Origin: Macrostomum lignano
Taxonomy: Eukaryota
Length of the DNA: 25,688 nucleotides
Direction: 5' to 3'
NCBI GenBank assembly: GCA_002269645.1
Contig: NIVC01005121.1
Location: forward strand, 1 to 25,688
Shown: positions 127 through 23,286 of the stretch, piece after piece
Numbering within the stretch: position 1 is the stretch's first letter
Layout of the letters: every line of letters begins with the position of its first letter
Notes under the pieces: model-generated
Seen by the model: the letters and a program-made list of their open reading frames with translations, nothing else
Databases searched by the model: none
Told to the model about the DNA's origin: nothing
Position numbers and translations under genes: made by a program

Positions 127-1691
127 AGACCTGATCAATTTGTCGGCTCGAACTCAAGATTATGAAGCCAAATCTTCAACGATACAGTTTGGCAAATGCA
201 AGTTACATTTCTTGGACTTTTCCTATCTATAAATACACTAGAATTGGCAAAAAATCGCTTTGAATAGCTCCGAAACTAGTTCGATACAGTAGAGACATGG
301 TTCTCTCTATGACATCGACAATTAGCGCTCCATTGACTTTGTCGTAAAATTGTGATTGAATGCTAATGCAAATTAAGTAATTTTAATTCAGTTCACTTAA
401 TTGAAATAACTTGATTTCAACGTAAACGTTTTTCTTGTTTGTCTTGTATTTTGTGGCCGCTTTAGAGGCTTGTCATGGAGGATTCATCATTGGGCGGGGA
501 TGTGGTGGGGAACAGTGGAGGGGTATGGGGACAAAAAATTAATGAGCTATCTTAGATAGTGCTAGATTTTCCGCGGGTGATTTAATAGATTGCTTGCTTC
601 TTCCCGTGGCCCCAAACTGTACATGTACATTTAGAGCTCAGCATTAAATCAGCATACATGTAGTTCTCTGAAAACAAAGAATTATGGAGCGTATTTTTCT
701 ACCCTTGACGATCTTTACACATAGCTCCACAAGCTCAATAGAGTTCCTGTGCGAATGGCAATGACTTCAAATGCTAAATTTTTTTTGCTTGGGTGTGCGA
801 GACAATTCGTCTGATAAATTAGATGCGCACTCCAAAACAGGCAGAGCCATTTTTAGGATCAGTGTACCAGTGAAAGAATACATGTATCTCAATCCTAGTA
901 TTGAGTGTCAATGGTCGTATATGTGTAGCCATAAAGTATTGAACATTCCCGGACTTTCTGATCAAGCGCCTTTAATTTTATACAGAACGCGACACATGGT
1001 ATTAGTACAATTTTTTAGGGCGGGGTGGAATTTTATTTAGGCATATGAGGGCAATTAAATCCGTCTAGTCTATTTTTCTATTTCTGCTGAAAGAAGCACT
1101 AGCCTAGTCTCTCTCAGCCCACGAGAATAGAGCAGAAAATGAACATAACAGAACGGAACAGAACAGAACTCTTTTACGATAAAGAATAAACACCAACAGC
1201 GAAAAAAGTCAAGTTGAAAACTCACTGACAATAATTTATTGTTCGTATATAAACTTTTGCCATATAATACTGAATTAAACTTTTAGTTTTTGTTTCACTG
1301 TTAAAAAGCGCGCATTTACAATTTAAACGCGTGAAAGAATAGTTTTCGTGCAAACTACACTAATAGAATAGAATATAACTTACATGTCTGTATAATCTTT
1401 TGTAAGTAACTGTAATCATGATTAAATAGCTAGTCTTTAACTTTAGTGTCTTTCGATTCGAATGAATTAGTTTACAACCATATATTATATTGCTTTTCAA
1501 TATTGTCACATTTAGGTTTGCATTGGATTGGTGTGACTGTGATGTGATTTCATTTATAAAAATTTTCAAAACAACAGGCAACAGTTGGTTTCATTTTATG
1601 TCACAAACTGGGTGCTTTTCACTAGATTTATAGCCTAAAACTCTGGACCTGTATTTAAAAAATCTCTTAGTTCACTCTTGCAATTTGCTCG

Positions 1692-5107: not shown

Positions 5108-6475
5108 TTATTCCTTGTCCTCATTTTCATCATCAATAGACTCAGGAGCTGCTAACAGTTGATGCACGGGTGTTAGCTCAAAGCTCTGCGTGTTGCTACT
5201 TCCGTCTCTTTGCACTTGCAGATGCAGCTGTTGCTGCTGTCCCGTGTTTTTAGGATAACTGCAGCATCGGCTGTTGATGCGCTGAAACTCGTCCTCAGCC
5301 CCAGCATCCGAATCCGATTCAGAATTCGATGATGAACCATCGTTATAATCGTGATCTTCGGCGATCTGCTCCGCCTCTCGGGATCTGCAATTGTTGGCGC
5401 TTAGATCGTTGAAATCCTCTTCGCTGACTAGAGGAATGGCCATGGGATGATTGGCTTGTCGCAGTTCTGACGGCGGGTGCGAATGGTTGGCCTTGCTAGC
5501 ACGCCGGGCCAGTTTCTGATCGACGCTGCCAGCTGGTTGAGCTCCCCAAATCCGTCGCCAGTAGCACAGAACTAAACGGTATCCATCGGCAAAGTTTCTG
5601 TTTAGTATGCCGTAAATAATCCAGTTGTCACAGGCGCTTGATATGCTAAATATGCCAAGGTAGCGATGAATCTGAGGATTGTATTGAAAGCTTGGATCAA
5701 CGCCGAATAAAATCATTACCGGTAGCCAGTGAAGAAAGAATGACACTAGTGATATAAAGAGCGGCAGCGTTGCACGTCTTTCGCGGCTCAGTTTTCTGGC
5801 CAGAAAAGCGGCATTGGCGGCTCCCATGTGCTGTTGCAAGTTTCGTCTTGTGCGCCTGAGTACGGAAAAAATCAATGCGTAGCAGGCGATGCAGACTACC
5901 ACACAAGGCAAGAAGCACAGGACATTGATGTACACGGCAATTGCAATTGGGTGTTTAGTGTAGTTTAAGTGGCAGACGTCGATCACCTGATTGTAGTTGT
6001 ATTGGAATAGCTGAGTGCCTGATGGCAGTGCCACTTGTATCACACTATATGTCCACAGTCCGATGCACCAAAGTGCGCTTCGCTTGTGTCTGAACAGTTG
6101 CACGACCAGGTGAGACTTACAGATAACAATGTAGCGAGTGAGTGCTATCAAAGCGCTAAAGTTGACAGTAGCGGCGCAGCTAAAGAACAGTGCAATACTG
6201 AACAATTTGCACCAGGGGCTGTTTGGCATGCCGGGTTGGTGCCATAGCATTCGAATTGAACCCGGGGCGACTAAACCGGCCAAGAACAGGTCGGCTGCAG
6301 CGAGGTTCGCTACAAAGAGCGAAGTGACATTTTTCATCTTCTTGTGTACTATCACGCAGATTATGATGAGACTGTTGCCAAAAACGCCGATAACTGAGAG
6401 AGCTATTAGCAGGGCCATGTCTAATGCCATATCGCTTTTGCTGTAGTTTATCTTAGTTGTTTGGTTGTCTGGCAT
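5108..6475 (-). CDS. Class A (rhodopsin-like) GPCR, melatonin-receptor-like orphan, intronless, 455 aa
   Basis: Seven hydrophobic segments carry class A motifs: GN (TM1), NLAAADL (TM2), WCK...LTRY (TM3, DRY variant), W in TM4, FLP...CY (TM5), HWLP (TM6) and DNWIIYGILNRNF (TM7/H8, resembling NAIIYGLLNQNF of melatonin receptors). The N-terminus has sequons NQT and NYS, and the C-tail is long and Ser/acidic/Gln-rich. Confidence 0.95.
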   Translation of the reverse strand: MPDNQTTKINYSKSDMALDMALLIALSVIGVFGNSLIIICVIVHKKMKNVTSLFVANLAAADLFLAGLVAPGSIRMLWHQPGMPNSPWCKLFSIALFFSCAATVNFSALIALTRYIVICKSHLVVQLFRHKRSALWCIGLWTYSVIQVALPSGTQLFQYNYNQVIDVCHLNYTKHPIAIAVYINVLCFLPCVVVCIACYALIFSVLRRTRRNLQQHMGAANAAFLARKLSRERRATLPLFISLVSFFLHWLPVMILFGVDPSFQYNPQIHRYLGIFSISSACDNWIIYGILNRNFADGYRLVLCYWRRIWGAQPAGSVDQKLARRASKANHSHPPSELRQANHPMAIPLVSEEDFNDLSANNCRSREAEQIAEDHDYNDGSSSNSESDSDAGAEDEFQRINSRCCSYPKNTGQQQQLHLQVQRDGSSNTQSFELTPVHQLLAAPESIDDENEDKE

Positions 6476-9977: not shown

Positions 9978-10580
9978 TTCCTGGCACTAACTTTCTTCTG
10001 TTTTGCTGATTCTGGCAAAGTGTCCCCGGCGTGGCCGCACGAATTGCTTTGCAAAGTATGTTTTTGTGCGTAGTTTAGTAGGTGTATTATGTGTGGGAAG
10101 CATCTGAATTACACAAAGCATTTCGATAGGAGTTAGGCTTGCGTTCGATCATCAAAAAAAGTTTTTCATGGTCCTCCCATCCGCAACCAAGCCTTTTACT
10201 TCCCTCTTGTGGGCCACTCCTAGATTGCACTTAAGGACTGGATCCCATTATTAAACATTCCTGGTGGTACAGTCGAATGGGCTTTCCATCTGTGTTGACT
10301 AACGACCGATTTCCATCTCGAGTCAGGCATTATTAATAATATAAAGTAAAGGCTTATAAAGTGCATATTTCTAAAATCTAAGGAATGGGATATTAAGATC
10401 AAATTTATAGCGAATGTTTTGCACTTTTAGACAGGACAGTTTTGTTTTATTTTCAAAGACTGAATCGATGTGGTTGTGTTTTAGCTGTTTTGCCTTAATG
10501 CCTTGTGATCGGATTGAGTCGAGACGGGCTAAAGCTTCCAGCGTGACGCTGACGCTGTAATCACAAAATAAATACAGTCT

Positions 10581-10855
10581 TGTGGCGGCCAGACTACGCG
10601 ACCGGCAGCACCAGTGCAGCCGCACTGGAAACCCCCCCCGCCTCTGTCTAGCTGAGGTGGGGTGGGTACGCGCCAAGCTAGCCGGCTCGCTAAGCCGGGG
10701 GGTTGGCGTAGCCAATCACGCCATGCCACCTTTTCGCACCTCCCTTGGCCCCTCAATCTGGCGTTGTTTGTAAATCTCATATAAATACACGCGCAAAGCA
10801 GCACAAACTCTTCGCTGCCATTCCATCTATTGAAACAAAAAGGCCTTCCGCCTCA
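10581..10855 (+). repeat. 5' LTR (275 bp)
   Basis: Starts TGTGGCGG and ends CCGCCTCA, a 7/8 terminal inverted repeat. Matches 12016-12292 except for three homopolymer lengths (C8/C10, G6/G7, C4/C3). Confidence 0.95.
10712..10787 (+). promoter_or_regulatory. Putative LTR Pol II promoter (CCAAT and TATA boxes; also present in the 3' LTR)
   Basis: CCAAT at 10712-10716 and TATAAATA at 10780-10787, with a GC-box-like CCCCGCC near 10636-10642. The order is typical of a U3 region; activity is inferred. Confidence 0.5.
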
Positions 10856-10856
10856 T

Positions 10857-10869
10857 TGGTGAGCCCGAC
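10857..10869 (+). promoter_or_regulatory. Primer-binding site, tRNA-Trp-like
   Basis: TGGTGAGCCCGAC matches 12/13 to TGGTGACCCCGAC, the complement of the common metazoan tRNA-Trp 3' end (recalled consensus). It is followed by a 7-bp hairpin, cccagcg/cgctggg (10871-10889). Confidence 0.7.
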
Positions 10870-10947
10870 ACCCAGCGCGGAACGCTGGGCCTACCTGGTC
10901 GGCCCTGTGCGGTCCTGGCAGCCAACCGCCTTGGCCGACTGCAACGG

Positions 10948-11049
10948 CAGCACCGCAGCACAGCAGCACCGCAGCACCGCAGCACCGCAGCACCGCAGCA
11001 CCGCAGCACAGCAGCACCGCAGCCCAGCAGCACCGCAGCCCAGCAGCAC
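10948..11049 (+). repeat. 8-bp minisatellite (CAGCACCG)~12.7 inside the LTR element
   Basis: 12 full units (cagcaccg, cagcacag, cagcccag) plus a partial unit, read directly. Confidence 0.95.
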
Positions 11050-11258
11050 GAATCGGCCCAGTCAGCCCGCCCCCCGGTAGCTCCTGGGGTCTCGCCTTTC
11101 GGCCCCCGCGTTGGACCAACCAGCGCCACACGCTGCAGCTACTTCTAGGTTAGCACCGCTGCTGCTAGCCTAACGTCCCCAGCCTCTGTGCAGGAGCATC
11201 GATCCGGCTCACGGCGGCAACTGACTGTCGATTGCCTCTGGTGTGGTACGGCCGCGCG

Positions 11259-11947
11259 CCCCTGCTGCCTTCGGCGCCCACCTGGCGCCCTGCTGCCATC
11301 GGCGCCCGCCTGGCGCCCTGCTGCTATCGGTGCCCGCCTGGCGCCCTGCTGCTATCGGCGCACGCCTGGCGTTCTGCTGCCTTCGGCGCCCGCCTGGCGC
11401 CCTGCTGCCTTCGGCGCCCGCCTGGCGCCCTGCTGCCTTCGGCGCCCGCCTCGCGCCCCTGCCGCCTTCGGCGCCCGCCTGGCGCCCTGCTGCTGCCTTC
11501 GGCGCCCGCCTGGCGCCCTGCTGCTGCCTTCGGCGCCCGCCTGGCGCCCTGCTGCTGCCTTCGGCGCCCGCCTGGCGCCCTGCTGCCTTCGGCGCCCGCC
11601 TGGCGCCCTGCTGCCTTCGGCGCCCGCCTGGCGCCCTGCTGCCTTCGGCGCCCGCCTGGCGCCCTGCTGCCTTCGGCGCCCGCCTGGCGCCCTGCTGCCT
11701 TCGGCGCCCGCCCGGCGCCCGCCTGGCGCCCTGCTGCTTTCGGCGCCCGCCCGGAGACCGCTCGGCGACCTGCTGCCATCGGCGCCCGCTCGGCGACCTG
11801 CTGCCATCGGCGCCCGCTCGGCGACCTGCTGCCATCGGCGCCCGCTCGGCGACCTGCTGCCATCGGCGCCCGCTCGGCGACCTGCTGCCATCGGCGCTCT
11901 GCTGCCTTCGGCGCCCGCCTCGCGCCCCCGCCGCCTTCGGCGCCCGC
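11259..11947 (+). repeat. 28-bp GC-rich minisatellite (about 24 units) inside the LTR element
   Basis: Consensus tcggcgcccgcctggcgccctgctgcct: 23/28 G+C, no A, 4 CpG and two GGCGCC palindromes. 31-bp variants occur near 11480-11560 and a ctcggcgacctgctgccat variant near 11760-11890. Confidence 0.95.
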
Positions 11948-12005
11948 TCCTCGGCGCTCTCGCTGCCTCGGCTACCACCCGACGTTCGGGGCCTAGCTCG
12001 GTGCT

Positions 12006-12012
12006 GGGGGAG
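12006..12012 (+). promoter_or_regulatory. Polypurine tract
   Basis: GGGGGAG ending 3 nt before the TG that starts the 3' LTR. Confidence 0.7.
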
Positions 12013-12015
12013 CTG

Positions 12016-12292
12016 TGTGGCGGCCAGACTACGCGACCGGCAGCACCAGTGCAGCCGCACTGGAAACCCCCCCCCCGCCTCTGTCTAGCTGAGGTGGGGT
12101 GGGTACGCGCCAAGCTAGCCGGCTCGCTAAGCCGGGGGGGTTGGCGTAGCCAATCACGCCATGCCACCTTTTCGCACCTCCCTTGGCCCTCAATCTGGCG
12201 TTGTTTGTAAATCTCATATAAATACACGCGCAAAGCAGCACAAACTCTTCGCTGCCATTCCATCTATTGAAACAAAAAGGCCTTCCGCCTCA
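12016..12292 (+). repeat. 3' LTR (277 bp)
   Basis: Direct repeat of 10581-10855, followed by the TSD GTCT. Confidence 0.95.
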
Positions 12293-14973
12293 GTCTAGCT
12301 CTTTTTGACACATCCTTGATTCTAAAGGGCCCATTTATCGCTTCCCTCCCAGCCTCTGACGAGTACAAGTATGTTGTTTTATAGTTTCACCTTTCTTCGT
12401 GCACTTCTTATTTTGCCCGAGGGGGGGCTGTGGAAACGAGACTGGCTTGTCGAGAGGTTAAGCCTAAGTGTCTGTCGATCTGAAGACTCGCGCTAGCGAG
12501 ATGATACTTAGTGCTGGAGGCGGTACAAAGATTCTAGCTCTATTTTAGAGAGGAAATTATTATAGAGAGGACATTGCCAGCTAAAAAAAGAGAATGAAAA
12601 AGGAATATTTTAAATTGGATTTAGACGATGTCTTATCACCGCAGCTGTTTCTGTCTGCTGTCAAGTAGGTGCCGGATCTCTCCAATGAAGAGATTAAATA
12701 CTGGATCGATTATGTCCTTTCGATACAGTTAGTGCACTGAGATTATGTTCAATCGAATCGTCTCAGAATACTAATCGATTTCTAACTCTGCGGGAGGTAA
12801 TTTGTCTTGGTAAGGACAGTAAGCAAAGAAGATTACACTGCTAATCGATGTCTAAGGCCCATTGATTTTCAAGCTGCTCCCATGTGCACGTGTGTCTGCT
12901 CAAGGCTAGATATAACATGTAGTACGATTGAGGCTAGACTGATTAGCATTTCGGTGTCTCAGAGCAGCCCTTTAATTCAATAATTATAGTCGATTTCCAT
13001 GTCTGTTGTTTTCAATTTTCTAGTAGGGCTTCGTTTAGCCCTTGAGTCGTGCTCCAGTGATTTTAAGAGAAGACTTGTATCAGCAATGTTTCAGCAAGTT
13101 GCAAAGCTAAAATTTATTCAAGCAGAATCTTGCAATTAATCACTTGAGAGGCTTAAAAATCCTATTTTGAGTTAAAGGAACCTCCCATGGCTGACCAACC
13201 AGCCGTGTCTTAGTTGGGCTTCAATTTGCACTTTTGTCCGTTGCTCAGACACTTTGTTACTTTTATTTTTAATTTCCTCTTGAATTTTTCGGAGCCTATT
13301 ATCCATTAGGCCTATACTTTTGCCTAATGCCCGGTTTTATTCGAATATGTCTGAAACAGGAAGCTTTTTTAAAGAGATCGAGAATCTGTGGTGAGGGGCT
13401 GACTTTAAAGGCCTCTGAAATATTTTGCAGAAGTTTCTCTTGCAGTTTACTTGGGGGTTCAATCCGCATTGGGCTTCTCTATAGGCTTTGTAATCCAATC
13501 AGATTTCCATGCCAATGCTTGCATGCTGGCTCCCTTTTTGCCTACTAGTATTACCCTCTCTCTCTCTCTAATTCCCTATTCTCCGATTTCTTTCCTTCTC
13601 TGGGCAACAAGTTCTCTCTGCTATCAGCTTTATCGAGTTCTTATTTTCAGCATATACTACGAGCGTATTTATCTCACTATGGGATTCGCTCTGATTAAAG
13701 AGTTTAGTCGGCCGCGTGCGATTAGCGATCGCGTATATTTTATTTGTAGCTTGTTTATTTTCCTATTCTGCTTTACATTTCTTGGAAATTTTGTTTGGAT
13801 GCTTGAATTTGCGCTCAAATTTAATACCGCCGTTAATCAGAAAAAAATTAAAGCGTAGTCGATACGAACTCAAGTGCTCAATAGTACAAATTAAAGACTA
13901 AAAATAGAAAAAATGCCTAATCTTAAAATAATTTCCACCATTATACGAGCATATAGATTTTCCGGCAAGTTGGTTGTTCAATTACTTTCTGTTCAAATAA
14001 GTTACTGTCGCCACAATGAAGTATCGATTGATGCGGGCGACGCCTAATCTCATTAAATTTGTATTAGTTTGATCCGTACTGGTTCGCTTGCTAGCAATTT
14101 TCCCCTTAGATGCGGGAGTAGTTCCTGGAGTAGAAATTGGGACTAGCGATTTTCCCGTTGCGGGTGCGGGGAGTTTTGGTCAATCTAATTTGGCTGCACG
14201 GACTCTCGGCAACGATGGGCGCGGCGTCAACTTGCAATCCCGCGTTCTGTCCTGTTTTCCATATAGCTCTGCACTGGGTCCGTAGCAGCCTTAGTCCGAT
14301 GCCTCTGCCCCTCGCGTGCTGCGAGGTGAGTATTCGGGAAATAGGGGAGTGGGAAATTTTTGCCTGCTCGATTTTCTCCTCCCTTCATCCTCTTCTTCCT
14401 TAAATTTCCCCCCGTTCCGCGGATAAACTGCCTGTCCGCGCATCCTGCATGGTCCGCGTATGGGTGGGGCTACATGGGTTTTGGTAAGAGATCCTCTCCT
14501 GAAATTGTCGATTTTTCCTATGCGTTTCAGTTGCCAATAGGGGAGGCTGAGGTGGGGTAGGTAATTCGGTTTTAGACAATTCTCAACTGCAAGCCTAGAA
14601 GCCTGGCGTCGTTTCCCTCTTGACTTGGCGGTCGCTGCGACAGTGTCCAGTTTCCAGTTCTCACATGCATGAGGGTAGCGGGTCTCTCGATTTTTTTTGT
14701 ATTTCCCCTTTTTCCTCTTTGTGCTCACTGCATGTTGGGGGAAGACGGGTATTTTGAGACGTTTCCTATAATGGGAAGAAATGACTTCCTTAATTTCGTC
14801 TTTAGAGCGCTGAGAAACAAGCCAGGACAGACAGTGAACTAGGTCGAAAAGTTGATGCGGTGCAGCGTTTTTTAATTCTCAATTCGCCTTGATGACAGGG
14901 TGGCTTAGTCACCACTCGGGAATTACATTTGAAACCTATGACAAACACTAAATCCCGTGACACTTTTAAGGAA

Positions 14974-15522
14974 TCAAACAATCGGCATCTTCAGGCAATT
15001 ATACCAGAAAGAAGGTAATTTTTTAAGCCTAGTAAGCCAATATGATGCAAATAAGCAGGTATGGGTAGCAAAGTTAGATGGCACTGATTGAGAGGCAAGG
15101 GCATAGGTCAGGACACTCGCCCCTCTACCACCAAGTCGGATGTTCATGGCGGGCTTTAGCTGTTTAATGTACAACGCCTCAGGAATAGACAACTTCATAC
15201 TCTGGCGGTTGCGATCAATAATTTCAAAGGGCCTGTCAACAAAAAAGTGACAAAAATTGGACCTGGGATAGAAGAGAACAAGCAAGGGGATAATTAGGGC
15301 ATGTCTAACTTTTGCGCATTTGTTGCACATCAGGAGGTGGTCGTACACAGCGCTTGCTATTGCACAGTCCTCCTTAACCCGTGTGTGTAGGTGCTTTTCA
15401 TTTTTACCTATGTAAAACCCGCATTGCTCAGCAACGCTCGAGAATTTGTAGATGACTCCCGCACACAAGGTTTTCGGTACACTGGACTTGAGTCTGTCTA
15501 TTTGGTGGAGACGTTTGCTCAT
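14974..15522 (-). mobile_element. Decayed Penelope-like element fragment: GIY-YIG endonuclease domain
   Basis: The ORF reads GVIYKFS...CGFYIGKNEKHLHTRVKED...SAVYDHL...FEII...KLSIPEALYIKQLKPAMN. This matches the PLE endonuclease pattern (GIY, YIG, R..EH, EA..I...KP..N), but the usual T after YIG and the H of EH are substituted. No RT domain is seen upstream. Confidence 0.8.
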
Positions 15523-16007
15523 TAAGTGAGACTTGCTTTCACTAGGTGTTGATTATCTTGATTTATGTAGCACAGCTGTAGCTGTGATTTGCGTAATCAC
15601 AATATATCAGTATCTATCGATGGGAAATTGTCGCCGCCTGATCCTGTATTGACGTTTTTCCACTATTGCATTGCAATTGGAACTACATTCACTCTATAGT
15701 TTTTCACCTTAGCACTCCAGAACTTGCTACAAGTGTACTGTTAATATTTGTTGAATATCAACTCTCGATTTCGAAACATGATGTGGGGCAAGCGGCATAC
15801 ATCAGCTATTGACAGCAAGGTACTTTTATAATTTGCTACAGAATTCCCAGGGCTGCATGCATAGGATGCCGGCCACTAGCTGTATGGTTATAAAAGATTT
15901 TCAACTGTAAAAGATTACACGTGTTTTGAAATTTCGATTCTAGCCACACCTTTGACTAGAAATTTATTATTTTTAATGTAAAAATGCGCCCCGTCTGGTG
16001 TTCTGCA

Positions 16008-16755: not shown

Positions 16756-17187
16756 ATGGAGCAGGCTCCTCAGCGGCAGCAGATGCAGAAACAGCAAATA
16801 ACCATTTTTGCTGTCTCTTCTCTCGCCTCCGCCGAGGCGATTGCAGCCGCTGAATTGCTAGCTTCAGCTCCTCTAATTGCTTGCGATCGTTGCAATTTGA
16901 AACTGCCGGCAGTAGACATGCCCAGTCATCGGCAGGTGTGCGTTGTCGATCCTGACTTGTTCGCCACTCTGGCCCTGCGGCCATCCACTGCGCCAGCTGA
17001 CTCTTACGGTTGTCCGGTGTGCGGCCGGTTTCAGGCCAGCGCGGCCAAGCTGGCTGAGCACAGAGCTCGATGGCATGATTTTACTGGGACTGGCAGTAAG
17101 CCGAAGTACAGGTGCCATCGGTGTCGATTGATCTGCGTTGGGGTTACTGGACTCAGGGAGCATATGCGGTTGAGACACGGCTCGTGA
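16756..17187 (+). CDS. Small intronless zinc-finger protein (143 aa): one C2HC and two C2H2 fingers
   Basis: ATG in an aaaacATGG context at 16756 (the track's 16738 start is non-ATG). Motifs are CDRC-x11-H-x3-C, CPVC-x12-H-x4-H and CHRC-x12-H-x4-H; TGA at 17185-17187. Confidence 0.8.
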   Translation: MEQAPQRQQMQKQQITIFAVSSLASAEAIAAAELLASAPLIACDRCNLKLPAVDMPSHRQVCVVDPDLFATLALRPSTAPADSYGCPVCGRFQASAAKLAEHRARWHDFTGTGSKPKYRCHRCRLICVGVTGLREHMRLRHGS

Positions 17188-17451
17188 CTGAATCTATAGT
17201 TTTTTTTCTATTTCTGATTTGTAGATCAGATAGCAAGTTGGATTGCTTTATTGGGGAATACCAATCCCAAAGAAGTTAAGAAGATCAGTTTTACGTCAAT
17301 AAGATCAAACTAAATTTTAGCAATTTTTCTACGAAATAACAGACTAACAACTTTCGAAAATGGCTGATGAAAAATGTATTTGTTTTAGTCGTTTTAGAGA
17401 AAATGATTAGATGTAGATGTTTAGATCATATGATACCGATAAAAAGGCCAT

Positions 17452-17918
17452 AAGGTGGGGCTAAAATAAACCTGTTTAGGTCCTAAGATTAGGCTAAAAT
17501 AGGCCCCTTTTAGGTCCTAAGATTAGGCTAAAATAGGCCCGTTTTATGTCCTAAGATTAGGCTAAAGTATGTTTATTTAGGTCCTAAGATTGGGCTAAAG
17601 TATGTTCATTTAGGTCCTAAGATTGGGCTAAAGTATGTTCATTTAGGTCTTGAGATTGGGCTAAAATAGGCCCGTTTTAGGTCCTTAGATTGGGCTAAGT
17701 AGGCCCGTTTTGTCATAAGATTGGGCTAAAGTAGGCCTGTTTTAGGTCCTAAGATTAGCCTAAAGTATGTTCATTTAGGTCCTAGGATTGGGCTAAAGTA
17801 TGTTCATTTTAGATCCTAAGATTGGGCTAAAATAGGCCCGTTTTATGTCAAGATTGGGCTGAAATCGGCCTGTTTTAGGTCCTAAGATTGGGCTAAAGTA
17901 TGTTCATTTAGGTCTTAA
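17452..17918. repeat. 33-34 bp minisatellite, about 14 units, two subtypes
   Basis: Shared taggtcctaagatt(a/g)ggctaaa followed by either ataggcccgttt or gtatgttcatt. Confidence 0.95.
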
Positions 17919-18672
17919 GCAAACGCGGGATTACTTTTGTTGGCTATACTGGTATATCGCTCAAATATTATTTCAAATTTTCGCTATAACGATGATTTTT
18001 TTTCACTATAAGTAGCAACGGATATTCTATAGATGTTCTTGCTCTATCCATGAGCGATTGAATTCCATTTATTAATACTACTAATTGAAGTCTGGTTTTT
18101 CACAATGCAACAGACTGCTTTCATTGTATAGAATATTATTTGTGTTGTTTGTGCTTGCTGCTGTATAAACATGTTGCTGCGCCTTTTGTTTTGCCAAAGT
18201 TTTCATGTGATTTTTATTTCGCGTCGCCTAATATTTTTCTGTGAATTCTTTCTTTTTCGCTTGCTTTGTTCGGGTTTCCTGTGCGTGCCATGCTCCCATA
18301 CATAACATTGATTTATTTCGCAACATTGATTGCTAAACCATATTGATCACATGTTTTTTCAAGTAAATTGTCTTTGAACTGTCTAAAAGTAGGCGCAATA
18401 AAACTAGCCCTTACGCTCGTACTCTATTATTTACATTAGTTCAATCTAACAACATCTAACTCGTATACCGCGTATTATCTACGATAATTGATGTAAGCTT
18501 TCATTTTACTGTCGTTTGATAGACAACTTTCAGATACCTTTGTTGTATCGATTTTACAATCAGGGAGTATGTATTGGTAAGAAGCAGTGTTTCCTCTGTA
18601 ATGCTCAGGAGGATGCTAGGAAATATTCTATGAAAGGTCATGAGCAACCCTATAAAACCTTAAACCCTATAC

Positions 18673-20079
18673 GATTCGGGCTGGCTCTCTCTGAAATGCT
18701 CGGCTGCGGTTCTGTGGAAGATTCGGGCTGCTGGCTCTCTCTGAAATGCTCGGCTGCGGTTCTGTGGAAGATTCGGGCTGCTGGCTCTCTCTGAAATGCT
18801 ATGGCTGCGGTTCTGTGGAAGATTCGGGCTGCTGGCTCTCTCTGAAATGCTCGGCTGCGGTTCTGTGGAAGATTCGGGCTGCTGGCTCTCTCTGAAATGC
18901 TCGGCTGCGGTTCTGTGGAAGATTCGGGCTGGCTTCTCTCTCTGAAATGCTCGGCTGCGGTTCTGTGGAAGATTCGGGCTGCTGGCTCTCTCTGAAATGC
19001 TCGGCTGCGGTTCTGTGGAAGATTCGGGCTGGCTTCTCTCTCTGAAATGCTCGGCTGCGGTTCTGTGGAAGATTCGGGCTGCTGGCTCTCTCTGAAATGC
19101 TCGGCTGCGGTTCTGTGGAAGATTCGGGCTGCTGGCTCTCTCTGAAATGCTCGGCTGCGGTTCTGTGGAAGATTCGGGCTGCTGGCTCTCTCTGAAATGC
19201 TCGGCTGCGGTTCTGTGGAAGATTCGGGCTGCTGGCTCTCTCTGAAATGCTATGGCTGCGGTTCTGTGGAAGATTCGGGCTGCTGGCTCTCTCTGAAATG
19301 CTCGGCTGCGGTTCTGTGGAAGATTCGGGCTGCTGGCTCTCTCTGAAATGCTCGGCTGCGGTTCTGTGGAAGATTCGGGCTGCTGGCTCTCTCTGAAATG
19401 CTAGGCTGCGGTTCTGTGGAAGATTCGGGCTGCTGGCTCTCTCTGAAATGCTCGGCTGCGGTTCTGTGGAAGATTCGGGCTGGCTTCTCTCTCTGAAATG
19501 CTAGGCTGCGGTTCTGTGGAAGATTCGGGCTGGCTTCTCTCTCTGAAATGCTCGGCTGCGGTTCTGTGGAAGATTCGGGCTGCTGGCTCTCTGAAATGCT
19601 CGGCTGCGGTTCTGTGGAAGATTCGGGCTGCTGGCTCTCTGAAATGCTCGGCTGCGGTTCTGTGGAAGATTCGGGCTGCTGGCTCTCTCTGAAATGCTCG
19701 CTGCGGTTCTGTGGAAGATTCGGGCTGCTGGCTCTCTCTGAAATGCTCGGCTGCGGTTCTGTGGAAGATTCGGGCTGCTGGCTCTCTGAAATGCTCGGCT
19801 GCGGTTCTGTGGAAGATTCGGGCTGCTGGCTCTCTCTGAAATGCTAGGCTGCGGTTCTGTGGAAGATTCGGGCTGCTGGCTCTCTCTGAAATGCTCGGCT
19901 GCGGTTCTGTGGAAGATTCGGGCTGCTGGCTCTCTCTGAAATGCTCGGCTGCGGTTCTGTGGAAGATTCGGGCTGCTGGCTCTCTCTGAAATGCTAGGCT
20001 GCGGTTCTGTGGAAGATTCGGGCTGGCTCTCTCTGAAATGCTAGGCTGCGGTTCTGTGGAAGATTCGGGCTGGCTCTCT
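18673..20079. repeat. 50-bp tandem array, about 28 units
   Basis: Unit gaaatgctcggctgcggttctgtggaagattcgggctgctggctctctct; period measured as 50 (18693 to 18743). There are no unique spacers. Confidence 0.97.
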
Positions 20080-20400: not shown

Positions 20401-20986
20401 GCCATCTAATCTATAGAGTCTAGTCTCATATGATCTATAATAATTTCAATTCATCTAAATTTAAAATCTTGTCTCCATCTGATCTATTTAACCTCTCTTC
20501 TCAAGTTCTCATCGAATGTATAGAATATCTGATCTACAGTCTCATCTCATCAAATCTATAGGATCTCGTCTCATCTGATCTATAATAATCTCAACTCATC
20601 TAAATTTAGAATCTCGTATCATCTGATCTATAAAATCTTATCTCATCTGATCTATAGAATCTTATCTCATCTCATCTGATCGGACCTATTAAACTTTTTT
20701 CATCTCATCTATAGAATCTCGACTCATCTGGTCTATAAAATCTTATCTCATGTCATCTATAGAATCTTATCTCATCTCATCTATAGAGTCTCGTTTCATC
20801 TGATCTATAGAAACGAGTCTTATCTGATTTATAAAATTTCGTCTCATCTAGTCTATAAGTCTCGTCTCATCTGATCTATAGAATCTCGTCGCATCTAATC
20901 TATAGAATGTCATCTCATCCGATCTATAGAATCTCGTCTCATCTAATCTATAGAATCTTATCTCATCTATAGAATCTCATCTCATG
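20401..20986. repeat. Degenerate ~24-bp tandem array
   Basis: Consensus close to atctatagaatctcgtctcatctg, with many substitutions and 5-nt (tctca) indels. Confidence 0.9.
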
Positions 20987-22782: not shown

Positions 22783-23286
22783 GACAGGGGTCATCAAAGC
22801 TAGCCAGTGTAAGTTAGGTAAAGGACAGAGGGTCATCTGACCCCAAAGCTAGCCAGTGTAAGTTAGGTAAAGGACAGGGGGTCATCTGACCCCAAAGCTA
22901 GCCAGTGTAAGTTAGGTAAAGGACAGGGGGGTCATCTGACCCCAAAGCTAGCCAGTGTAAGTTAGGTAAAGGACAGGGGGGTCATCTGACCCCAAAGCTA
23001 GCCAGTGTAAGTTAGGTAAAGGACAGGGGGGTCATCTGACCCCAAAGCTAGCCAGTGTAAGTTAGGTAAAGGACAGGGGGTCATCTGACCCAAAGCTAGC
23101 CAGTGTAAGTTAGGTAAAGGACAGGGGGGTCATCTGACCCCAAAGCTAGCCAGTGTAAGTTAGGTAAAGGACAGGGGGTCATCTGACCCCAAAGCTAGCC
23201 AGTGTAAGTTAGGTAAAGGACAGGGGGGTCATCTGACCCCAAAGCTAGCCAGTGTAAGCTAGGTAAAGGACAGGGGGTCATTTGAC
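22783..23286. repeat. 49-50 bp intronic minisatellite, about 10 units, each with a GGGGTCA-TC-TGACCCC palindrome
   Basis: Unit aaagctagccagtgtaagttaggtaaaggacaggggggtcatctgacccc. Copies start at 22796, 22845, 22894, 22944, 22994, 23044, 23092, 23142, 23191 and 23241, and differ almost only in G/C run length. Confidence 0.97.

What the first reader, a model, noticed from the sequence alone, without database searches (positions are those of the whole stretch)
10581..12292. Intact, very young non-coding mini LTR retrotransposon (TRIM-like)
Seen: every cis element needed for mobilisation (TG..CA LTRs with 7/8 inverted ends, 4-bp GTCT TSD, PBS, PPT, CCAAT/TATA in the LTR) and no gag or pol in 1160 internal bp. 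The LTRs show no substitutions over ~275 bp, only three homopolymer length differences. Known: LTRs are identical at insertion, and TRIMs are mobilised in trans; few are described in animals compared with plants. Inference: a recently or currently active parasite of an autonomous gypsy element, possibly an undescribed family.
Basis: partly seen in the sequence, partly recalled or inferred. Interest (0 to 1): 0.8.

Follow-up and report, generated by a model that had tools for sequence, protein, structure and literature searches.

The report
Small non-coding LTR retrotransposon, flatworm genome
This is a real 1.7-kb LTR retrotransposon insertion in the flatworm Macrostomum lignano that has lost all its genes and must borrow another element's enzymes to move; it is an ordinary kind of genomic parasite, newly noted in this species, and whether it is still active could not be tested.

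Summary
Window 10581-12292 has two direct repeats of 275 and 277 bp with no substitutions. They have TG..CA ends and a 4-bp GTCT duplication on each side. The 1160-bp interior matches no protein family.

The host is the flatworm Macrostomum lignano. One base after the 5' LTR sits TGGTGAGCCCGA. This matches exactly the tRNA-Trp primer-binding consensus published for the CsRn1 clade of Ty3/gypsy elements, which also make 4-bp duplications. M. lignano has nine CsRN1 families.

Two minisatellites fill 64% of the interior: an 8-bp unit x13 and a 28-bp unit x23.

The public Mlig_3_7 assembly carries the same insertion at the same site on a distinct haplotype, so it is not an assembly artefact. There the arrays are shorter (x10, x17), and the homopolymer differences fall in the opposite LTRs, so they are sequencing noise.

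The flanks of the two haplotypes differ by 0.75%, yet 969 bp of the element show no substitution. This is unexplained, and the element is not a private new insertion.

Genome copy number, solo LTRs, empty sites, transcripts and the autonomous partner could not be tested.

Verdict: a new member of a known kind (TRIM-like non-autonomous LTR element). Recent activity is plausible but unproven.

The parts
10577..10580 (+). 5' copy of the 4-bp target-site duplication GTCT
   Evidence: In the Mlig_3_7 copy this reads GTT, a 1-nt indel.
10581..10855 (+). 5' LTR, 275 bp, TG..CA, terminal octamer TGTGGCGG
   Evidence: No substitutions against the 3' LTR or against both LTRs of the second haplotype.
10712..10716 (+). 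CCAAT box in U3
   Evidence: motif scan. Function is inferred.
10780..10786 (+). TATAAAT, the putative TATA box. It predicts a start near 10810, leaving 45 nt or less for R+U5.
   Evidence: No AATAAA/ATTAAA and no heat-shock element in the LTR. U3/R/U5 limits are not determined.
10857..10868 (+). Primer-binding site TGGTGAGCCCGA, 1 nt after the LTR, tRNA-Trp type
   Evidence: Exact match to the CsRn1-clade consensus TGGTGA(G/C)CCCG(T/A) in PMC2582038. Unique in the window, 0.01 expected.
10871..10889 (+). Perfect 7-bp stem, 5-nt loop hairpin (CCCAGCG CGGAA CGCTGGG) just after the PBS
   Evidence: Present in the MFE and centroid folds of the leader. Leader z-score is -2.0. A role in packaging is an inference.
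10947..11049 (+). Tandem array of the 8-bp unit GCAGCACC, 12.9 copies
   Evidence: 9.9 copies in the Mlig_3_7 haplotype.
11050..11259 (+). Unique central interior, 210 bp, 67% G+C
   Evidence: Identical in the second haplotype apart from one homopolymer length difference. Fold z-score -1.95.
11260..11897 (+). Tandem array of a 28-bp unit (CTGCTGCCTTCGGCGCCCGCCTGGCGCC), 22.6 copies, decaying into degenerate units up to about 11960
   Evidence: Runs of identical units. 16.8 copies in the second haplotype. GGCGCC occurs 36 times in the interior against about 3 expected.
12006..12012 (+). Short polypurine tract GGGGGAG, 3 nt before the 3' LTR
   Evidence: The only purine run of 6 nt or more in the interior. 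ta-TRIM shows the same 3-nt spacing.
12016..12292 (+). 3' LTR, 277 bp, ends CCGCCTCA
12293..12296 (+). 3' copy of the target-site duplication GTCT

Best explanation
Window 10581-12292 is one integration of a non-autonomous LTR retrotransposon in the Macrostomum lignano genome. It is TRIM-like by architecture and encodes no gag or pol.

Proposed cycle:
1. RNA polymerase II starts in the 5' LTR, downstream of CCAAT and TATAAAT. The transcript ends in the 3' LTR.
2. The RNA is packaged into particles made by an autonomous Ty3/Mdg4 (gypsy) element, most likely of the CsRn1 clade.
3. Host tRNA-Trp anneals to TGGTGAGCCCGA next to the 5' LTR and primes minus-strand DNA.
4. GGGGGAG before the 3' LTR primes the plus strand.
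5. The helper's integrase recognises the TG..CA ends and inserts the cDNA, making a 4-bp duplication (GTCT).

The interior carries no genes. It is mostly two minisatellites that change copy number quickly.

Shown: the structure, the PBS match, the duplication, the lack of coding similarity, and the presence of the insertion on two haplotypes.

Inferred: transcription, trans-mobilisation, the identity of the helper, and recent activity.
For: - LTR pair with no substitutions, TG..CA ends, 7/8 inverted termini and a 4-bp duplication.
- The PBS is a 12/12 match to the published CsRn1-clade tRNA-Trp consensus. That clade also makes 4-bp duplications and has TGT... LTR starts. The pattern is unique in the window and lies 1 nt from the LTR.
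- M. lignano has nine CsRN1 families among 137 LTR families.
- The only purine run of 6 nt or more in the interior abuts the 3' LTR.
- CCAAT and TATA boxes lie in the LTR.
- No protein-family or protein-database match for any interior frame. No Rfam family.
- The host was identified through a GPCR and a second gene matching M. lignano proteins.
- The same element sits at the same site in NIVC01001279.1 of Mlig_3_7. LTRs and unique interior are identical there, and only array copy number and homopolymer lengths differ.
- TE insertions are polymorphic between the same two haplotypes 9-10 kb away, so LTR elements have moved recently in this genome.
Against: - Only one locus is known. No other copy or solo LTR appears in the window or in about 65 kb of further M. 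lignano DNA.
- PBS usage can vary between families of one clade, so the link to CsRn1 is probable, not certain.
- The PPT is only 7 nt.
- No canonical polyadenylation signal lies in the LTR, and R+U5 would be 45 nt or less.
- The insertion is shared by two haplotypes that differ by 0.75% in their flanks. This argues against a very recent event, unless it was copied across by gene conversion.
Confidence: 0.8

Rival explanations
1. It is a single dead-end derivative: one autonomous element that lost its whole coding region by deletion or recombination, with minisatellites expanding in the leftover UTRs. It never propagated as a family.
For: Only one locus was seen. The same genome region holds a clear deletion derivative with 100% identical LTRs (L003 17609-20288), so such derivatives do arise here.
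Against: That derivative still carries gag, protease and integrase remnants. This element has none in any frame. It keeps every cis signal intact. A derivative deleted before integration has itself been mobilised in trans, because it has its own duplication.
Confidence: 0.2
2. The insertion is not young. Its LTRs and its two allelic copies look identical because they were homogenised, either biologically (gene conversion between LTRs, alleles or homeologues) or technically (short-read polishing pulling a multi-copy repeat towards its family consensus).
For: The flanks of the two haplotypes differ by 91 substitutions in 12.1 kb, some within 80-150 bp of the element. Yet 969 bp of non-array element sequence show none, against about 7 expected (Poisson P about 7e-4). 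Mlig_3_7 was polished with Pilon using Illumina reads.
Against: Long-read consensus normally keeps copy-specific substitutions. Homogenisation by polishing needs many near-identical copies elsewhere, which would itself mean recent amplification. The alternative, a young insertion carried onto the second haplotype by a short conversion tract (window 10498-12369), fits equally well.
Confidence: 0.3
3. It is an assembly artefact or a chance direct repeat, not a retroelement insertion.
For: GC-rich tandem arrays and homopolymers are hard to assemble. Array lengths differ between the two versions.
Against: The window and Mlig_3_7 contig NIVC01001279.1 are two distinct sequences that differ at flanking SNPs and at two other TE insertions. 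Both carry the same LTR-interior-LTR structure at the same site. The duplication, the PBS at +1 and the PPT at -3 are not expected from misassembly.
Confidence: 0.02

Closest known systems
ta-TRIM of taeniid tapeworms (Koziol et al. 2015, PMC4558846)
   Same: A flatworm host and a non-coding LTR-PBS-interior-PPT-LTR layout. TG..CA ends, mostly 4-bp duplications, and a PPT separated from the 3' LTR by 3 nt. No canonical AATAAA. A helper is inferred from shared PBS, LTR ends and duplication length.
   Different: ta-TRIM has LTRs of about 198 bp and an interior of about 590 bp, a tRNA-Leu PBS 4 nt from the LTR, a 15-nt PPT, and a Saci2/lennie helper. Here the LTR is 275 bp and the interior 963-1160 bp, mostly minisatellite. 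The PBS is tRNA-Trp type at +1 and the PPT is 7 nt. No sequence similarity was tested or claimed. For ta-TRIM the copy number (>1000 loci) and expression are known; here they are unknown.
CsRn1-clade Ty3/gypsy elements (CsRn1, PwRn1, AgCR; Bae et al. 2008, PMC2582038)
   Same: The PBS is identical to the clade consensus TGGTGA(G/C)CCCG(T/A). The duplication is 4 bp, the LTR starts TGT, and the LTRs are a few hundred bp long. The clade is present in M. lignano with nine families.
   Different: Those elements are about 5-kb autonomous elements with gag (CHCC motif) and pol. This one has no coding sequence. Its LTR ends TCA, where the paper gives ACA for LTR retrotransposons in general and AAA or ATA in some CsRn1-like elements. 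It would be a dependant of the clade, not a member in the phylogenetic (RT-based) sense.
Classical plant TRIMs and animal TRIMs (PbTRIM in ants PMC3532108; bivalve TRIMs PMC6934838)
   Same: Small, gene-less LTR retrotransposons mobilised in trans, with a PBS, a PPT and a target-site duplication.
   Different: Classical TRIMs are 0.5-1 kb with interiors of 100-300 bp. This element is 1.5-1.7 kb. It fits only the broader '<4 kb' definition.
LARDs (large retrotransposon derivatives)
   Same: Non-autonomous LTR elements with a non-coding interior.
   Different: LARDs are >4 kb. This one is far smaller.

Membership tests
LTR retrotransposon (any) | Two long direct terminal repeats bounded by TG..CA with short inverted termini | tested here: met
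   275/277-bp repeats, no substitutions, TGTGGCGG..CCGCCTCA.
LTR retrotransposon (any) | Target-site duplication of 4-6 bp flanking the element | tested here: met
   GTCT on both sides. 3' copy GTCT and 5' copy GTT in the second haplotype.
LTR retrotransposon (any) | tRNA primer-binding site just after the 5' LTR and a polypurine tract just before the 3' LTR | tested here: met
   The PBS starts TGG at +1 and is a 12-nt match to a published tRNA-Trp PBS consensus. The PPT GGGGGAG at -3 is the only purine run of 6 nt or more in the interior, but it is short.
TRIM (non-autonomous, <4 kb sensu Wicker 2007 as quoted in PMC4558846) | No gag/pol coding capacity | tested here: met
   No Pfam family at or near threshold in 10 interior frames. 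No hit for LTR or interior ORFs in 5.8 billion proteins. Only four weak low-complexity hits in 1.84 billion.
TRIM (non-autonomous, <4 kb sensu Wicker 2007 as quoted in PMC4558846) | Total length <4 kb, typically 0.5-1 kb, with LTRs of about 100-250 bp and an interior of 100-300 bp in the classical sense | tested here: inconclusive
   1712 bp (1513 bp in the other haplotype), LTR 275 bp, interior 1160/963 bp. This meets the <4 kb limit and exceeds the classical sizes. Without the two arrays the interior is about 420 bp.
TRIM (non-autonomous, <4 kb sensu Wicker 2007 as quoted in PMC4558846) | A dispersed multi-copy family with solo LTRs, i.e. evidence of repeated trans-mobilisation | not testable with these tools
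   The M. lignano genome is not in any searchable DNA collection (searches found nothing). No extra copy appears in the window or in loci L001-L003.
Dependant of a CsRn1-clade Ty3/Mdg4 element | Same primer tRNA (tRNA-Trp PBS TGGTGA(G/C)CCCG(T/A)) and the same duplication length (4 bp) as the helper | tested here: met
   Caveat: PBS choice can differ between families of one clade.
Dependant of a CsRn1-clade Ty3/Mdg4 element | LTR termini (integrase recognition) and leader shared with an autonomous element in the same genome | not testable with these tools
   No M. lignano CsRN1 sequence could be retrieved.
Cassandra-type TRIM (pol III gene inside the LTR) | A 5S rRNA or tRNA-like gene in the LTR | tested here: not met
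   No Rfam match even at E<=1. No tRNA.
Heat-inducible HSE-bearing LTR families of M. lignano (PMC12801592) | A canonical heat-shock element in the LTR (the paper's regular expression) | tested here: not met
   No match in the LTR on either strand. The neighbouring element in L003 has three.

The most novel reading that the evidence does not exclude
This is one copy of a currently active, multi-copy, gene-less LTR family in M. lignano that hijacks CsRn1-clade particles through a shared tRNA-Trp PBS. Its interior has been replaced by fast-evolving GC-rich minisatellites. These arrays are dense in the palindrome GGCGCC (36 copies) and might act in RNA dimerisation or packaging, or might seed satellite DNA. 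The substitution-free island shared by two otherwise diverged haplotypes would then reflect conversion of the insertion onto the homologous or homeologous chromosome. That would be a second, non-replicative way for the element to spread in a hidden polyploid.
Probability: 0.15. Interest if true: 0.55.

Novelty: new member of a known kind. Interest (0 to 1): 0.33.

Why it matters
M. lignano is a transgenic model flatworm. About 21% of its genome is LTR retrotransposon, and some families are strongly induced by heat.

Both published LTR surveys would have missed this element class. One starts from reverse transcriptase. The other required a duplication of at least 5 bp and discarded unclassified elements. 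Gene-less dependants like this one are therefore a blind spot in the annotation.

If this is a family, it offers a simple system for studying trans-mobilisation. It has a PBS-defined helper clade in an animal where constructs can be injected. It would also supply polymorphic markers, from both insertion presence and array length. If it is a single copy, it is a routine annotation item.

Tried and rejected
1. Other copies through proteins. A chimeric query of LTR and interior ORF translations gave no hit in 5.8 billion proteins. The 340-aa array ORF gave four weak low-complexity hits in 1.84 billion. For M. lignano the database holds only the NCBI annotation, which excludes repeats.

2. Other copies through DNA. 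Exact patterns from the LTR, the LTR/PBS junction and the 28-mer gave nothing in metagenome, GTDB genome or viral contigs. This was expected, because none of these holds the flatworm genome.

3. Empty-site allele.
- A chimeric query of neighbouring ORFs found BOX15_Mlig026264g1 on contig NIVC01004726.1.
- The 10-kb flank stops 687 bp short of the insertion site.
- That contig is almost identical to the element-bearing contig anyway.
- The only other haplotype I could read carries the insertion.

4. Host tRNA-Trp. No tRNA genes in the window or in L001-L003.

5. Autonomous partner in the window. No open frame of 75 codons or more outside the element looks like pol.

6. RNA families. Nothing in Rfam, even at E<=1.

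7. Heat-shock elements and AATAAA in the LTR: none.

8. Literature. No paper links Macrostomum to non-autonomous elements or TRIMs. A search for the PBS string returned only unrelated primers.

9. I first assumed the window was the Mlig_3_7 contig. I rejected this because the GPCR differs by 2 residues and the flanks by 0.6-1.3%.

Full report
**1. What is in the sequence**

Window 10581-12292 is bounded by two direct repeats, 10581-10855 (275 bp) and 12016-12292 (277 bp).
- Aligned, they show no substitutions. The only differences are three homopolymer lengths: C8/C10, G6/G7 and C4/C3.
- They begin TG and end CA. The terminal octamers TGTGGCGG and CCGCCTCA are inverted repeats at 7 of 8 positions.
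- The tetranucleotide GTCT flanks both ends, at 10577-10580 and 12293-12296.
- The element is a G+C island: LTRs 58%, interior 76%, in flanks of 40%.
- The LTR carries CCAAT at 10712 and TATAAAT at 10780. It has no AATAAA/ATTAAA and no heat-shock element.

**2. The priming sites are better than chance**

One base after the 5' LTR lies TGGTGAGCCCGA (10857-10868). Bae et al. 2008 give 5'-TGGTGA(G/C)CCCG(T/A)-3' as the conserved primer-binding site of CsRn1-clade Ty3/gypsy elements. It is complementary to the 3' end of tRNA-Trp. The same paper reports 4-bp duplications and LTRs that start TGT.
- This pattern occurs once in the 25.7-kb window, at this position, with 0.01 matches expected.
- Directly after it is a perfect 7-bp hairpin (10871-10889), which appears in both the MFE and centroid folds.

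Before the 3' LTR, GGGGGAG (12006-12012) is followed by CTG.
- It is short for a polypurine tract.
- It is still the only purine run of 6 nt or more in the 1160-bp, pyrimidine-rich interior.
- The tapeworm ta-TRIM shows the same 3-nt spacing.

**3. The interior does not code**

Because of its G+C content, all six frames are largely open, with 215-289 codons between stops. Even so:
- Ten open frames gave no Pfam match near threshold.
- A combined query of LTR and interior ORFs found nothing among 5.8 billion proteins.
- The longest ORF found only four weak low-complexity matches among 1.84 billion representatives.
- Rfam finds nothing, even at E<=1. There is no 5S or tRNA gene in the LTR as in Cassandra elements.

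Tandem arrays make up 64% of the interior: GCAGCACC x12.9 (10947-11049) and a 28-bp unit x22.6 (11260-11897).
- A 28-bp period is not a multiple of three, so it cannot hold a reading frame.
- The 28-bp array contains runs of identical units, more than ten of type A and four of type B. It decays into degenerate units at its 3' edge. This is the signature of recent in-place expansion.

**4. Host and context**

An intronless rhodopsin-type GPCR at 5108-6475 (minus strand) is 99.6% identical to M. lignano BOX15_Mlig009868g1. A second gene at 22176-24622 matches BOX15_Mlig026264g1/023543g1. The window is therefore M. lignano DNA.

The element lies 4.1 kb upstream of the GPCR, in the opposite orientation. 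The public annotation has no gene call over it.

**5. A second haplotype carries the same insertion**

Looking up the GPCR returned NIVC01001279.1:204475-225842 of assembly Mlig_3_7 (L003).
- It is collinear with the window but not identical to it. There are 53 substitutions in 9.2 kb on the left of the element and 38 in 2.9 kb on the right. These are clean, isolated SNPs.
- The GPCR differs by two residues.
- Two transposon insertions are present there and absent from the window, where clean empty sites remain.

So the window and this contig are two real haplotypes: alleles, homeologues of this hidden polyploid, or different lines.

The contig carries the element at the same site (L003 4374-5886, record about 208,848-210,360).
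- All four LTRs are free of substitutions.
- The homopolymer differences fall in the opposite LTRs from those in the window, so they are long-read noise.
- The unique interior is identical.
- The arrays are shorter: 8-mer x9.9 and 28-mer x16.8. The element is 1513 bp there.

This rules out an assembly artefact. It also shows that the minisatellites change quickly.

**6. An unexplained feature bearing on age**

Suppose the insertion predates the split of the two haplotypes and evolves like its flanks (0.75%). Then the 969 bp of non-array element sequence should show about 7 differences. None is seen (Poisson P about 7e-4), although SNPs lie 84 bp to the left and 78 bp to the right.

Three readings remain open:
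- A young insertion was copied onto the second chromosome by a short conversion tract or by close double recombination.
- Illumina polishing (Pilon) pulled a multi-copy repeat towards its consensus. That would itself imply many near-identical copies.
- Chance.

In every case the element is not a private, brand-new insertion. Perfect LTR identity alone cannot date it.

**7. What could not be tested**

The M. lignano genome is not in any searchable DNA collection. Its TE proteins are excluded from the annotation.
- No further copy or solo LTR occurs in the window or in about 65 kb of extra M. lignano sequence. That is only 0.01% of the genome.
- An attempt to read the homologous site on contig NIVC01004726.1 stopped 687 bp short. 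That contig is nearly identical to NIVC01001279.1 in any case.
- Copy number, solo LTRs, empty alleles, transcripts, the host tRNA-Trp and the helper element all remain open.

**8. Mechanism**

The best-supported reading is a gene-less LTR retrotransposon mobilised in trans.
- It would be transcribed from the LTR promoter.
- It would be packaged and reverse-transcribed in particles of a CsRn1-clade Ty3/Mdg4 element, using tRNA-Trp. M. lignano has nine such families.
- That element's integrase would insert it with a 4-bp duplication.

The helper assignment rests on PBS identity and duplication length. The same logic linked ta-TRIM to lennie. It is weakened because PBS choice can vary within a clade.

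**9. Comparison and novelty**

Under the '<4 kb' definition this is a TRIM. By classical sizes it is oversized, though the interior shrinks to about 420 bp without the arrays.
- TRIMs are already known in ants, bivalves and tapeworms.
- Nothing comparable is reported for Macrostomum in the searchable literature.
- Both published M. lignano LTR surveys would have missed it by design: one is RT-first, the other used LTRharvest with a minimum duplication of 5 bp and dropped unclassified elements.

It is a new member of a known kind, of moderate to low interest. The CsRn1-type PBS, the minisatellite-dominated interior and the substitution-free island add some value.

Noticed in passing
L003 17609-20288 (NIVC01001279.1); empty site at window 380-384 (ATTTT): A 2680-bp LTR element present in Mlig_3_7 but absent from the window, with a 5-bp duplication. 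Its 249-bp LTRs are 100% identical, and each has three canonical heat-shock elements by the regex of PMC12801592. This fits their heat-inducible Mlig-id115|Mag family. The interior keeps a 699-codon gag/protease frame and an integrase-core fragment, but RT and RNase H are deleted. It is a polymorphic deletion derivative.
   Followed up: partly
L003 15109-16617; empty site at window 1361-1364 (TAAT): A 1509-bp AT-rich (29% G+C) element with 11-bp perfect terminal inverted repeats GGGCATTTCCG, flanked by TAAT. It is present in Mlig_3_7 and absent from the window. It is probably a non-autonomous DNA transposon insertion polymorphism.
   Followed up: partly
window 10498-12369 compared with L003: A substitution-free island barely larger than the element, inside flanks that differ by 0.75% between the two haplotypes. 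The cause is unresolved: conversion tract, polishing artefact or chance.
   Followed up: partly
window 17451-17919, 18680-20072, 20414-20985, 22795-23286: Four further minisatellite arrays: 33/34 bp x14, 50 bp x28, 24 bp x19 and 50 bp x10. The 24-bp array has at least 72 units in L001 and L002, so array length is highly variable between haplotypes.
   Followed up: no
window 14977-15552 (minus strand); window 15196-15395: This open frame contains 'GVIYKF..C...YIGKN'. From memory it resembles the GIY-YIG endonuclease motif of Penelope-like elements, but Pfam gives no hit. Next to it, a 200-bp segment of the window is missing from both Mlig_3_7 contigs.
   Followed up: no
whole window compared with NIVC01001279.1 and NIVC01004726.1: The window is not the public Mlig_3_7 sequence. 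It differs from both contigs, which are nearly identical to each other: 34 against 2 differences over window 12979-15195. Its GPCR differs from BOX15_Mlig009868g1 at S93G and E445A.
   Followed up: partly
window 16756-17187 (plus strand): A 143-codon ORF with C2H2-like zinc-finger motifs and only weak Pfam hits. It has no match in the protein database and no gene call at the equivalent place in Mlig_3_7.
   Followed up: no
window 10856-12015: The palindrome GGCGCC occurs 36 times in the interior against about 3 expected from composition, twice per 28-bp unit. Whether this matters for RNA pairing or is only a by-product of the repeat was not tested.
   Followed up: no
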